Shown: piece by piece, positions 38,780 through 40,997 of the stretch
How positions within the stretch are numbered: position 1 is the stretch's first letter
Layout of the letters: each line of letters opens with the position of its first letter
Origin: Saccostrea echinata
Lineage: Eukaryota
Assembly (NCBI RefSeq): GCF_033153115.1
Contig: NW_026889811.1
Coordinates: forward strand, 2,666,001-2,730,000
Length of the DNA stretch: 64,000 nucleotides
Direction: 5' to 3'
Notes under the pieces: model-generated
The model's input: the letters and a program-made list of their open reading frames with translations, nothing else
The model's database searches: none
What the model was told of the DNA's origin: nothing
Made by a program: the position numbers and the translations under genes

Positions 38780-40449
38780 ATGGCGGAGAAAAACGTGCTT
38801 TATCAATGTGAAGACTGCAATTTGTACTTTTCCAGCTTAGATGATGTTAAAATGCATAGATGCACAACGGAATCAAGTGAGTTTTGTTACTGTGTATACG
38901 TTTTACTGCAAATGCTTATTTAGAAACTTAAATTTATAGGGATATTTAGTGCGCACCTTATTAGCCATCATAAAGGCCCAAGATGGGTCAAGAAAATCTT
39001 AGATTTTTAAAGGGAAAGTGGGGGGGGGGGGTACAAACCTAAAAAATGACATATTTACGAGGAAAAAAGTGTATTAAAAAGGACAAGTAAAAATTGTAAT
39101 AGTAGGGAAAGGGGTCGATCACAGTGGCGATCTTTTTTCGAATCTCCTCGTCTTTTTGAAAGCATATCCAAATGGTATTAACTAAATGAAGGTTTACCTT
39201 TTAGCACCCCTCCCCCTTTTTAATTCTGCTATTTATATCTTTTGCAATTGAGTTTTATAATTTGCAATGCAGCAGTATGTACTTTGATATTAATGTATAC
39301 TATTAGTATAAAAGATATTTTTTCTCATTTAGGCGGAGAAAATAATTCCATCCTTGTGACAAAACAAACAGCACATGAAATTAATGCCGAAAGTCAAATG
39401 AAAAAACGCACGGTAACCCAGTGCCACAACTTCAACGACATGGAGTTGATGTCTGAGCACATATGTCAGAAACCACTAGCAGGGACACCATCATCAGGTA
39501 ATTAATGTTAAAGTTAAAAATTTTACAGATTAGTATACCTGGGAGGTTGCACTTTCAAGAGATTAATATTTCCTCCTCCCATAATAAGTAGTAACTAATT
39601 TTGTACTAATTACATAGGAGTAGATATATTTCACATCAAGAGAAAAATATTGAAACTGTTACTCAAAAGAAGTAATTCTATATAGTATATGATCTTCATA
39701 TTCTGGAATAAACACCATAAATAAATACATGTAACAGGTTGTGTCTAACATGTATTTTTTTTAAATGTTAAGCATTGAAAGTATATATTTATTAATTTTA
39801 ATGTTTTCTAGGAGATGAAAAGGAGAGTAAAGTTGCCTCATGCAGTCCTGCGGATATAGGTATGTCTTGGACACGCTCTAGTACCTTACTTCTAATAACC
39901 AAATACAAAACATATCAAGAGAAAATTAAGAAAGGTTTGATGAAGAAGAAAACCATGTGGGAGGAAATTGCCACAGGGATGAAAGATGAAGGATACTCCT
40001 ATAATCATGAGCAAGTCTCAGGGAGATGGAAGACTTTGCAGAGAGGATACAAAGCAGTCAAAGACAATAAGAAGAAAAGTGGAACTGGAAGAAAGCGTTT
40101 TGAATATGAGTCTGAATTGGATGAAATATATTCCAAAGATCCTGCCATTACTCCAGAAGTAACTGCCTGTAGCACTGACTCCAAAATTTCTGCAGAAGTT
40201 CCCAACGATTCAGAGGATGGTGACGATGAGAGTTCAAGGTCGTCTACGCCCACACCATCAGGTTCAGGTACTAATCCAAAGAAAAGAAAGCGTACATCTA
40301 CTTCAACAGAGGTCATTGATGTAATGAAAAACTTTATTGAAAATCAGGAAAAAAGAAGAAAGGAGGAAAGTGAGCGTAAAGAAAAAATGCATCATGAAAA
40401 GATGGATTTGATGAAAAAACTCATTGAGACAATGGGAGCACATCACTAG
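38780..40449 (+). CDS. Harbinger-associated Myb/SANT (trihelix) DNA-binding protein with N-terminal C2HC zinc finger
   Basis: Exons 38780-38876, 39333-39497, 39812-40449 (all phase 1). YQCEDCNLYFSSLDDVKMHRC, then WTRSSTLLLI...MWEEIATGM...QVSGRWKTLQRGYKAVKDN...FEYESELDEIY, and a C-terminal coiled coil. Confidence 0.88.
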
Positions 40450-40833
40450 TGAGTGTTGTGTTCCTTATACCTTGGCTCAGCACAAATATCCTTACATGAT
40501 AAAATTAAAATATGCATATGGCTGAAAATTATTATTACATGTATTTACAATACTTTTTGTGTAAATCCTTAGAAAATTGAATTATCTAATTTTAATTTTA
40601 ACATTATTATATTAAATACATGTACACATTTAGTTCCTTGAAATCAAAGAGTAGGAAACATTCCATTACATGCGTTTGGTCATTATTTTTACAATACATG
40701 TACAATCATGTACTATTGTTACATTTAATCCATTTACAAGTTCTTACTCCATGTTAAAGATTACATATTACATGATCTTGACTTTGCTCATAGGAACTCC
40801 TGTTTAATTTTTGTTGATATAATCTCTTTTCAG

Positions 40834-40997
40834 GTGAATGTGAAATCTGCATGGAAGAAAGTCATCCAAAAGAAGTAGTGTTTGTTGACTGTGGCCACCT
40901 TGTGTGCTGTATTCCATGCAGCAAAGCTCTAGAAGTCTGTCCAATATGCAGATCAAGAATTGCGAAAAAAGTTAGTGTTTTTTACGTAGACTCTTAA
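40834..40997 (+). CDS. Terminal exon encoding an IAP-type C3HC4 RING finger inside the Harbinger element
   Basis: Pyrimidine tract + CAG acceptor, then ECEICMEESHPKEVVFVDCGHLVCCIPCSKALEVCPICRSRIAKKVSVFYVDS*. Phase 1, compatible with donors at 39859 and 39497. Not in the supplied ORF track. Confidence 0.82.

What the first reader, a model, noticed from the sequence alone, without database searches (positions are those of the whole stretch)
38780..40997. Harbinger accessory gene that may switch between a Myb/SANT domain and an IAP-type RING E3 ligase by alternative splicing
Seen: 385 bp after the Myb ORF stop, and inside the TIRs, is an intact exon with a good acceptor (TTTTCAG, 40833) encoding a complete C3HC4 RING (CEIC...VFVDCGHLVCCIPC...CPICR) followed by a stop. 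A strong phase-1 donor AG|GTATGT sits at 39859, right before the first Trp of the Myb domain, and the RING exon is also phase 1. Read-through would give ZnF-Myb-coiled coil; using the donor would give ZnF-RING. Established: canonical PIF/Harbingers encode a DDE nuclease plus a Myb/SANT protein, this RING pattern is typical of IAP C-termini, and IAPs are expanded in bivalves. Inference: a transposon-encoded ubiquitin ligase (autoregulation of the transposase or anti-silencing), or a vehicle that shuffles RING exons. I do not recall RING cargo described for Harbingers but cannot confirm novelty.
Basis: partly seen in the sequence, partly recalled or inferred. Interest (0 to 1): 0.85.

Follow-up and report, generated by a model that had tools for sequence, protein, structure and literature searches.

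The report
Oyster Harbinger transposon with RING exon
A young, multi-copy Harbinger "jumping gene" of the oyster Saccostrea echinata carries, behind its usual DNA-binding helper gene, a conserved extra exon for a ubiquitin-ligase (RING) domain; related oyster and scallop gene models splice it in place of the DNA-binding part, so this transposon lineage probably makes its own ubiquitin-tagging protein.

Summary
The window carries a 5.0 kb PIF/Harbinger element (38645-49154, 3-bp TSD TCT), split by a nested 5.5 kb THAP transposon. It encodes a zinc-finger/Myb accessory gene (+), a phase-1 terminal exon for an IAP-type C3HC4 RING (40834-40997, +) and a convergent DDE transposase (-).

The RING exon is part of the element. 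It is present in all 10 other copies (about 99% identical, 9 independent insertion sites). The same Myb > RING < transposase layout recurs in three further Harbinger lineages of this genome. Between lineages synonymous sites are saturated, yet all zinc ligands, the phase-1 acceptor and the stop position are kept.

RefSeq models give isoform pairs that share the zinc-finger N-terminus and continue into either Myb or RING: one gene in Ostrea edulis, and matching models at several loci in Pecten maximus.

E3 activity and target are untested. The window copy itself is damaged (finger 2 and the RING tail).

I found no paper reporting RING-bearing Harbingers. This scan had already noted the same thing on other copies in this genome (s1-807517, s1-808020).

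The parts
38642..38644 (.). Left target-site duplication (TCT)
   Evidence: Same 3 bases at 49155-49157. 6 of 9 independent insertion sites of the family show a perfect 3-bp TSD.
38645..38661 (+). Left TIR of the Harbinger element (begins GGGTGCGTTCC)
   Evidence: All 11 copies start here. The first 17 nt are nearly the same in the L037/L038 sister family.
38780..38876 (+). Accessory gene exon 1: start codon and first C2HC zinc finger (C-x2-C-x12-H-x-C); donor CAA|GTGAGT, phase 1
   Evidence: Weak Pfam zf-C2H2 match, E 1.3e-3, below the family's cut-off.
39333..39497 (+). Accessory gene exon 2, phase 1 at both ends. In the other copies it is 177 nt and holds a second C2HC finger; here a 12-bp deletion breaks that finger.
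   Evidence: copy-by-copy translation.
39812..39859 (+). Exon 3a: a 16-codon linker ending at the internal phase-1 donor TAG|GTATGT (39859|39860), the proposed switch point
   Evidence: Equivalent junctions are used in the O. edulis and P. maximus isoform pairs.
39860..40449 (+). Exon 3b (read-through): Myb/SANT-like domain, acidic/Ser-rich linker, NLS-like KKRKR, C-terminal coiled coil, stop codon
   Evidence: Myb_DNA-bind_4 at E 6e-14. 46% identical to O. edulis isoform X1 over 195 aa, E 1e-49. The C-terminal helix and stop position are kept across lineages.
40370..40375 (+). Second phase-1 donor-like site, AAA|GTGAGC (40369|40370), inside the coiled coil; it would give a ZnF-Myb-RING product
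   Evidence: Its position is not conserved between lineages.
40504..40509 (+). ATTAAA poly(A)-signal-like hexamer 55 nt after the Myb stop (a second at 40611), upstream of the RING exon
   Evidence: A motif match only.
40834..40997 (+). Terminal RING exon: phase-1 acceptor ttttcag|GT, IAP-type C3HC4 RING, stop codon
   Evidence: zf-C3HC4_3 at E 2e-11. The RING profile's best solved matches are the IAP RINGs, E 1e-14. Present in all copies and three other lineages with the same acceptor phase. pN 0.33-0.41 against saturated pS.
41981..41984 (.). TTAA target of the nested insertion (duplicated at 47494-47497)
   Evidence: Uninterrupted copies join here.
41985..47493 (+). Nested, unrelated 5.5 kb DNA transposon (THAP ORF 42240-42701; TIR begins AGGTCAACTGAAA). 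Not part of the Harbinger.
   Evidence: (inverted repeat I14).
47772..48800 (-). Harbinger DDE transposase ORF (342 aa, intact), convergent with the accessory gene
   Evidence: DDE_Tnp_4 at E 4e-39. Intact in 6 of the 11 copies in the alignment, this one included.
49138..49154 (-). Right TIR (reverse complement begins GGATGCGTTCC)
49155..49157 (.). Right target-site duplication (TCT)

Best explanation
This is a recently active PIF/Harbinger transposon of Saccostrea echinata. Its accessory gene has two alternative 3' ends. All transcripts start with one or two C2HC zinc fingers (exons 1-2). Read-through of exon 3 gives the canonical helper protein: ZnF, Myb/SANT and a coiled coil. By analogy with Harbinger3_DR, this protein binds the element's ends and brings in the transposase. 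If the phase-1 donor at 39859|39860 (or the exon-2 donor at 39497|39498) is joined to the phase-1 acceptor at 40834, the Myb and coiled-coil parts are replaced by a 52-53-residue IAP-type RING, giving a protein of about 155-160 aa. That ZnF-RING protein is most likely a dimeric RING E3 ubiquitin ligase whose only targeting module is the zinc-finger N-terminus it shares with the helper protein. It would therefore act on whatever that N-terminus binds. My preferred guess is the element's own transposition complex, either as self-regulation or as turnover of transposase or helper. What is shown: the exon's presence, its conservation, its phase and its IAP type; its membership in the element; and annotated ZnF-Myb and ZnF-RING isoform pairs in sister elements of other bivalves. 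What is inferred: splicing in this family, E3 activity, and the target.
For: (1) The element is real: 11 copies about 99% identical, at 9 independent sites, with TIRs and 3-bp TSDs. At least one copy (L027) has every reading frame intact.
(2) The RING exon is in all copies.
(3) The Myb > RING < transposase layout recurs at 8 further loci that fall into 3 other lineages (Tnp 45-54%, Myb 40-45%, RING 44-49% identical).
(4) In the three diverged lineages where the acceptor can be read, its phase is 1 as in the window; the stop falls 1-2 residues after a K-V/I-F motif; the frame closes just upstream of the exon, and there is no conserved ATG, so the exon can only be expressed by splicing.
(5) Between lineages pS is 0.75-0.91 (saturated) against pN 0.33-0.41, and 16 columns are invariant, including all 8 zinc ligands.
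(6) Isoform pairs with the junction just before the Myb domain: O. edulis XP_048775362.1 (X2) against LOC125672779 X1; P. maximus XP_033740288.1 and XP_033730555.1 (X2) against the 'trihelix GT-1-like' X1. Ylistrum balloti XP_060074786.1 is also a ZnF-RING protein.
(7) The L037/L038 sister family, 84% identical to the O. edulis protein, is itself a bounded Harbinger with TIRs and TSDs, and carries the same donor and acceptor.
(8) The RING profile matches the cIAP2, cIAP1, XIAP and BIRC7 RINGs at about E 1e-14, through to the last residues of those chains.
(9) Three positions are invariant across lineages: the Ile after the first Cys, the Arg after the last Cys, and the Phe in the tail. From my knowledge of the BIRC7-UbcH5B~Ub structure (4AUQ) these are the E2-binding, linchpin and donor-ubiquitin-contacting positions.
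(10) Five other Harbinger families lack any RING, and the transposase tree separates RING-bearing from RING-less families by one branch, support 0.97.
Against: I could not inspect what supports the RefSeq isoforms. The L036 lineage has no good donor before the Myb domain but a strong one after it, and a Tegillarca granosa model is ZnF-Myb-RING, so the product may differ between lineages. Copies within the family are too alike to show selection; diversity is flat at about 1% across exons and introns. The window copy has a broken second finger and an altered RING tail. The E3 target is a guess; a fold test of transposase with the ZnF-RING protein gave no answer.
Confidence: 0.7

Rival explanations
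1. In this family the RING is added after the Myb domain rather than instead of it. The phase-1 donor AAA|GTGAGC at 40369|40370 joins to 40834 and gives ZnF-Myb-RING, with the last 26 residues of the coiled coil replaced. The protein would then be a DNA-end-bound E3 ligase. This could occur as well as the ZnF-RING form.
For: The site is phase 1 and scores 3.5 on the crude donor matrix. The L036/L040/L041 lineage has its only good donor (CAG|GTAGGC, score 4.5, phase 1) after the Myb domain. Tegillarca granosa KAJ8300619.1 is a ZnF-Myb-RING model carrying both Pfam domains.
Against: The position of this donor is not conserved between lineages. The two RefSeq isoform pairs use the donor before the Myb domain. 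The Tegillarca protein is labelled 'hypothetical protein'; I could not check what evidence supports it.
Confidence: 0.15
2. The isoform pairs seen in Ostrea and Pecten belong to domesticated host genes derived from Harbingers. The RING exon in the S. echinata elements would then be carried along without being used by the transposon.
For: RefSeq names them as ordinary genes. Harbinger Myb and transposase pairs have been domesticated repeatedly (PMC9392472, PMC9710019, listed). I could not fetch the loci.
Against: The S. echinata counterpart of the O. edulis gene lies inside a bounded Harbinger with TIRs and TSDs and a convergent transposase. In P. maximus the same 154-aa protein is annotated under two accessions on two contigs, and a third, shorter RING isoform on another, which points to a multi-copy element. 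Within S. echinata the exon has been kept in four mobile lineages while synonymous sites saturated.
Confidence: 0.08
3. The RING exon is a dead passenger: a fragment of a host IAP gene captured once, with no function. The RefSeq RING isoforms would be prediction artefacts.
For: DNA transposons do capture host exons. The closest host RING in this genome is the last coding part of a BIR-containing IAP gene, at 52% identity. Within the family diversity is flat.
Against: A dead fragment would not keep 8 of 8 zinc ligands, the acceptor phase, the stop position and an open frame across lineages whose synonymous sites are saturated. No host exon is close in sequence, nor did the DNA search find one.
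Confidence: 0.04

Closest known systems
Canonical two-gene PIF/Harbinger elements (e.g. Harbinger3_DR of zebrafish; Ping/Pong of rice)
   Same: DDE_Tnp_4 transposase plus a separate Myb/SANT-like helper gene, short TIRs and 3-bp TSDs. The Myb protein is reported to bind the transposase, allow their joint nuclear import and bind the element's ends (PMC9179366, citing Sinzelle et al. 2008).
   Different: This element has a third coding module, a RING exon downstream of the helper gene's stop codon that can be reached only by splicing. It also has N-terminal C2HC fingers. The TSDs are not restricted to TWA (TCT, ATA, TAA, TGT, ACG were seen).
RING domains of IAP proteins (cIAP1/BIRC2, cIAP2/BIRC3, XIAP, ML-IAP/BIRC7)
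   Same: These are the best solved matches (E about 1e-14) and the alignment runs to the C-terminal residue. They share the same C3HC4 spacing, the CPxCR motif and an aromatic residue in the short C-terminal tail.
   Different: No BIR domain, so this is not an IAP. The RING is attached to transposon zinc fingers. The closest IAP RING in the same genome is only 52% identical.
RAG1 / RAG1-like transposases of Transib-related elements (N-terminal RING E3)
   Same: A ubiquitin-ligase RING encoded by, or derived from, a DNA transposon (Kapitonov and Koonin 2015, PMC4411706, listed; not read in detail).
   Different: There the RING is part of the transposase polypeptide and belongs to another superfamily. 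Here it is an alternative end of the non-catalytic helper gene in a Harbinger.
Drosophila P element: alternative splicing gives transposase or a repressor sharing the N-terminal DNA-binding domain (from my own knowledge)
   Same: The logic is the same: one transposon gene, a shared N-terminal targeting module, and a C-terminus chosen by splicing that changes the protein's activity.
   Different: In the P element the choice is intron retention within the transposase gene and the product is a truncated protein. Here the choice adds a different enzymatic domain to the helper gene.

Membership tests
PIF/Harbinger superfamily | DDE transposase of the DDE_Tnp_4 / Plant_tran type | tested here: met
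   ORF 47772-48800 (-): PF13359 at E 3.9e-39 and PF04827 at E 2e-15.
PIF/Harbinger superfamily | Second gene encoding a Myb/SANT-like DNA-binding protein | tested here: met
   ORF 39862-40449: PF13837 at E 6e-14.
PIF/Harbinger superfamily | Terminal inverted repeats and 3-bp target-site duplication | tested here: met
   11-nt TIR with 1 mismatch. TSD TCT in the window; a perfect 3-bp TSD at 6 of 9 independent sites, though not all TWA. The sister family has TSDs TCA and ACG.
PIF/Harbinger superfamily | Multiple dispersed copies (mobility) | tested here: met
   11 copies at 98.2-99.9% pairwise identity on 10 contigs. Two pairs share flanks, leaving 9 independent sites.
IAP-type RING E3 (Pfam zf-C3HC4_3) | C3HC4 zinc-ligand pattern and profile match above the curated cut-off | tested here: met
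   PF13920 at 44 bits against a cut-off of 27. All 8 ligands are invariant in 4 lineages.
IAP-type RING E3 (Pfam zf-C3HC4_3) | Closest to IAP RINGs rather than other RING classes | tested here: met
   cIAP2, cIAP1, XIAP and BIRC7 at E 1e-14 to 2e-12, against MYLIP, MUL1 and MDM4 at E 4e-9 or weaker.
IAP-type RING E3 (Pfam zf-C3HC4_3) | Short C-terminal tail with an aromatic residue (needed for RING dimer and E2~Ub contact in IAPs; my knowledge) | tested here: met
   The family form ends ...KVFFT and the other lineages end ...KVFKC...KVFM and ...KIFKA. The window copy's tail is altered by a 2-bp deletion.
IAP-type RING E3 (Pfam zf-C3HC4_3) | Ubiquitin-ligase activity | not testable with these tools
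   Needs an in vitro ubiquitination assay.
IAP (inhibitor of apoptosis) protein family | At least one BIR domain | tested here: not met
   No BIR match in any exon of the gene. The ZnF-RING proteins of other bivalves carry only PF13920. It is therefore not an IAP; only its RING is IAP-like.
Alternatively spliced gene (ZnF-Myb / ZnF-RING) | Transcripts with both junctions | tested here: inconclusive
   Not obtainable for this family. Homologous RefSeq isoform pairs exist in O. edulis and P. maximus with the predicted junction, but I could not inspect the evidence behind them.

The most novel reading that the evidence does not exclude
The ZnF-RING isoform is a transposon-encoded counter-defence or chromatin-acting E3 ligase. 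It would be recruited through the shared zinc fingers and ubiquitinate a host factor such as a silencing, repair or chromatin protein, to favour transposition. This would be the DNA-transposon analogue of viral RING E3s, maintained across oysters, scallops and ark clams.
Probability: 0.15. Interest if true: 0.85.

Novelty: new variant of a known kind. Interest (0 to 1): 0.66.

Why it matters
[quoted passage not shown] A conserved third product, a ubiquitin ligase made by re-splicing the helper gene, would add post-translational control to the tools of a cut-and-paste transposon. Control of the element itself or of the host are both possible. It would also give a directly testable system, because Harbinger transposition has been reconstituted in yeast and in human cells. 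There is a practical point too: RefSeq currently names these transposon products as host genes ('mib1-like', 'LRSAM1-like', 'APD1-like', 'MEX3B-like', 'trihelix GT-1-like'). That can inflate counts of E3 ligase and IAP-like genes in bivalves, a group where expansion of such families is much discussed.

Tried and rejected
- Homology search with the window's Myb ORF found nothing. The same search with the sister family's ORF succeeded.
- Joined spliced model.
- Selection within the family. Diversity is about 1% everywhere, in exons and introns alike, so this has no power. L036 against L041 gives dN/dS 0.59 from only 7 differences, which is uninformative.
- Recent capture from a host gene. Rejected: no DNA-level match outside the family, and the best host RING is 52% identical.
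- Link between the C2HC fingers and the RING. The fingers occur in all RING-bearing lineages but also in one RING-less family (L043/L044), so the link is not strict.
- Complex prediction, transposase (L038) with the O. edulis ZnF-RING protein: 'no answer', score 0.00, partner poorly folded. This is no evidence either way.
- Literature. Five searches and two papers read in part turned up no RING-bearing Harbinger. Repbase and Dfam could not be searched.
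Full report
**What is in the sequence**

The finding's coordinates are accurate.
- A gene on the + strand starts at 38780.
- Exon 1 (38780-38876) encodes a C-x2-C-x12-H-x-C zinc finger.
- Exon 2 runs 39333-39497.
- Exon 3 starts at 39812 and stays open to a stop at 40447-40449. 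It contains a Myb/SANT-like domain (PF13837, E 6e-14), followed by an acidic/serine-rich linker and a coiled coil.
- 384 nt after that stop, the acceptor ttttcag|GT opens an exon at 40834. It encodes a complete C3HC4 RING (PF13920, 44 bits against a cut-off of 27) and ends in a stop at 40995-40997.
- Every exon boundary is phase 1. This includes the internal donor TAG|GTATGT at 39859|39860, which lies three codons before the first Myb tryptophan.
- The RING frame closes 16 nt upstream of the acceptor and has no usable ATG before the first cysteine pair. The exon can therefore only be expressed by splicing.

**It is inside a Harbinger, and the Harbinger is young**

Own-genome DNA searches show the following structure:
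- 38645-41984 plus 47498-49154 is one 5.0 kb repeat unit.
- 41985-47493 is a different transposon nested at a TTAA site. It has a THAP ORF and its own copies elsewhere.

The unit ends in GGGTGCGTTCC and GGATGCGTTCC (reverse complement) and is flanked by TCT on both sides. It carries a convergent DDE_Tnp_4 transposase ORF at 47772-48800 on the - strand (E 4e-39).

Ten other copies are 98.2-99.9% identical. Two pairs share flanks, which suggests haplotigs or a duplication, so nine insertion sites are independent. Six of those nine have perfect 3-bp TSDs.

Copy L027 has every frame intact. The window copy does not:
- a 12-bp deletion removes half of a second C2HC finger in exon 2;
- a 2-bp deletion changes the RING tail from ...KVKVFFT-stop to ...SVFYVDS-stop.

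The genome is Saccostrea echinata. This follows from a 100% match between a locus on contig C15 and RefSeq LOC133188009.

**The RING exon is an old, conserved part of a Harbinger clade**

I searched the genome with the RING exon, the Myb ORF and the transposase separately. The same order, Myb (+), RING (+), transposase (-), turned up at eight further loci (L036-L041, L047, L048). These fall into three further lineages:
- transposase 45-54% identical to the window's;
- Myb 40-45% identical;
- RING 44-49% identical.

The following features hold in each lineage:
- The RING exon sits 140-385 nt after a conserved Myb stop codon.
- Its acceptor is phase 1.
- It ends one or two residues after a K-V/I-F motif.
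- All eight zinc ligands and 16 columns in all are invariant.

Between lineages, the proportion of synonymous differences is 0.75-0.91, which is saturated. The non-synonymous proportion is 0.33-0.41. That is clear purifying selection, although a ratio cannot be computed.

Five other Harbinger families of the genome have no RING on a sensitive profile scan. A transposase tree separates RING-bearing from RING-less families by a single branch with support 0.97, which fits a single gain or loss.

One sister family (L037/L038) is itself bounded by nearly the same 17-nt TIR and by 3-bp TSDs.

No host exon resembles the RING at the DNA level. The closest host RING, at 52% identity, is the end of a BIR-containing IAP gene.

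**How the exon is used**

All searches were exon by exon, by reference.

The evidence for usage is therefore comparative.

A search with the sister family's ORF returned two Ostrea edulis RefSeq proteins from one contig:
- 'LOC125672779 isoform X1' (316 aa; two fingers, Myb, coiled coil);
- 'E3 ubiquitin-protein ligase mib1-like isoform X2' (164 aa).

They are identical for their first 116 residues, up to ...KDEK. X1 then continues into the Myb domain and X2 continues with the RING. That junction is exactly the phase-1 donor AAG|GTAATA that I had scored in the S. echinata L037 copy, joined to its RING acceptor.

A full-library search with a profile of the transposon RINGs added more:
- Pecten maximus isoform X2 proteins: XP_033740288.1, and XP_033730555.1 = XP_033758991.1, the latter annotated on two contigs. 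They share their N-terminus with the 'trihelix GT-1-like isoform X1' protein and diverge at ...SSEK|, nine residues before the Myb tryptophan.
- A Ylistrum balloti two-finger-plus-RING protein.
- A Tegillarca granosa model in which the RING follows the Myb domain.

In my experience RefSeq isoforms usually rest on transcript evidence, but I could not check that here.

For the window's own family, the donor at 39859 is the best-scoring phase-1 site (4.2 on a crude matrix). A second phase-1 site at 40369|40370 (3.5) could give a ZnF-Myb-RING product. The L036 lineage seems built that way.

ATTAAA hexamers at 40504 and 40611 fit termination of the Myb isoform upstream of the RING exon, but this is a motif match only.

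**What the RING is**

The profile of the transposon RINGs matches the solved RINGs of cIAP2, cIAP1, XIAP and BIRC7 at E 1e-14 to 2e-12. It matches MYLIP, MUL1, MDM4 and MDM2 only at E 4e-9 or weaker. The alignment runs to the last residues of the IAP chains.

Three positions are invariant across lineages:
- the isoleucine after the first cysteine;
- the arginine after the last cysteine;
- the phenylalanine in the tail.

From my knowledge of the BIRC7-UbcH5B~ubiquitin structure, these correspond to the E2-binding, linchpin and donor-ubiquitin contacts. This argues for an active, dimeric E3, but it is an inference.

There is no BIR domain, so this is not an IAP.

**Most likely mechanism**

One transposon gene makes two proteins with a common zinc-finger N-terminus.
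- The first is the canonical Myb helper, which works with the transposase at the element's ends.
- The second is a small ZnF-RING E3 ligase.

The ligase's only targeting module is shared with the helper. I therefore think it acts on the same partners and most likely tunes the amount or turnover of the transposition proteins. Action on host chromatin or on silencing factors is the more novel alternative.

A fold test of transposase against the ZnF-RING protein gave no answer. It counts neither way.

**Novelty**

Five full-text searches and two papers read in part found no report of a RING in Harbinger elements. The fish Harbinger survey read describes two ORFs only.

Known parallels are the RING of RAG1 and RAG1-like transposases, and the splicing-controlled repressor of the P element. 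Repbase and Dfam could not be searched.

This scan had already reached the same reading on two other copies in this genome (s1-807517, s1-808020). I re-derived the evidence independently, and those notes did not change my scores.

Noticed in passing
window 41985-47493: A nested 5.5 kb DNA transposon with a TTAA target duplication, roughly 14-25-nt TIRs (beginning AGGTCAACTGAAA), an N-terminal THAP ORF (42240-42701) and two further ORFs (43343-44122, 44457-44762) with no Pfam match. At least 5 other copies at 94-100% identity lie on contigs C1, C38, C2, C25 and C14. TTAA plus THAP suggests a Kolobok-like element (from memory); I did not test this.
   Followed up: partly
L026 vs L029 (C41 / C19) and L027 vs L028 (C27 / C18): Two pairs of Harbinger copies share identical flanking sequence and are 99.8-99.9% identical. 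They are probably uncollapsed haplotigs or recent segmental duplications in the assembly.
   Followed up: no
RefSeq proteins P0011, P0023, P0161, P0044, P0009: Products of Harbinger accessory genes are named as host genes in RefSeq: 'E3 ubiquitin-protein ligase mib1-like', 'LRSAM1-like', 'APD1-like', 'RNA-binding protein MEX3B-like' and 'trihelix transcription factor GT-1-like'. These are likely mis-annotations that inflate bivalve E3 gene counts.
   Followed up: partly
Myb ORFs of window, L036, L037, L039, L040, L041: In the six copies whose Myb frame is unbroken, every donor-like GT site scoring above 2 inside the Myb ORF is in phase 1, and none is in phase 0. Phase 2 is expected to be depleted, because GTRAGT read in that frame gives a stop codon. 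The absence of phase 0 sites is unexplained; it may reflect composition, or selection for donors compatible with the RING exon.
   Followed up: partly
L036 / L040 / L041 (C14:9.77 Mb, C29:43.54 Mb, C16:13.53 Mb): This Harbinger lineage has no good donor before the Myb domain but a strong phase-1 donor (CAG|GTAGGC) in the linker after it. That predicts a Myb-RING product, like the Tegillarca granosa model KAJ8300619.1.
   Followed up: partly
window 32377-32874 (-), 33796-34767 (+), 51959-52750 (+): Three C/EBP-like bZIP ORFs flank the transposon-rich interval.
   Followed up: no
L043 / L044 (C9:36.87 Mb, C23:1.12 Mb): A RING-less Harbinger family also has a C2HC finger upstream of its Myb domain, so the N-terminal finger appears to predate the RING exon or to be independent of it.
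   Followed up: no
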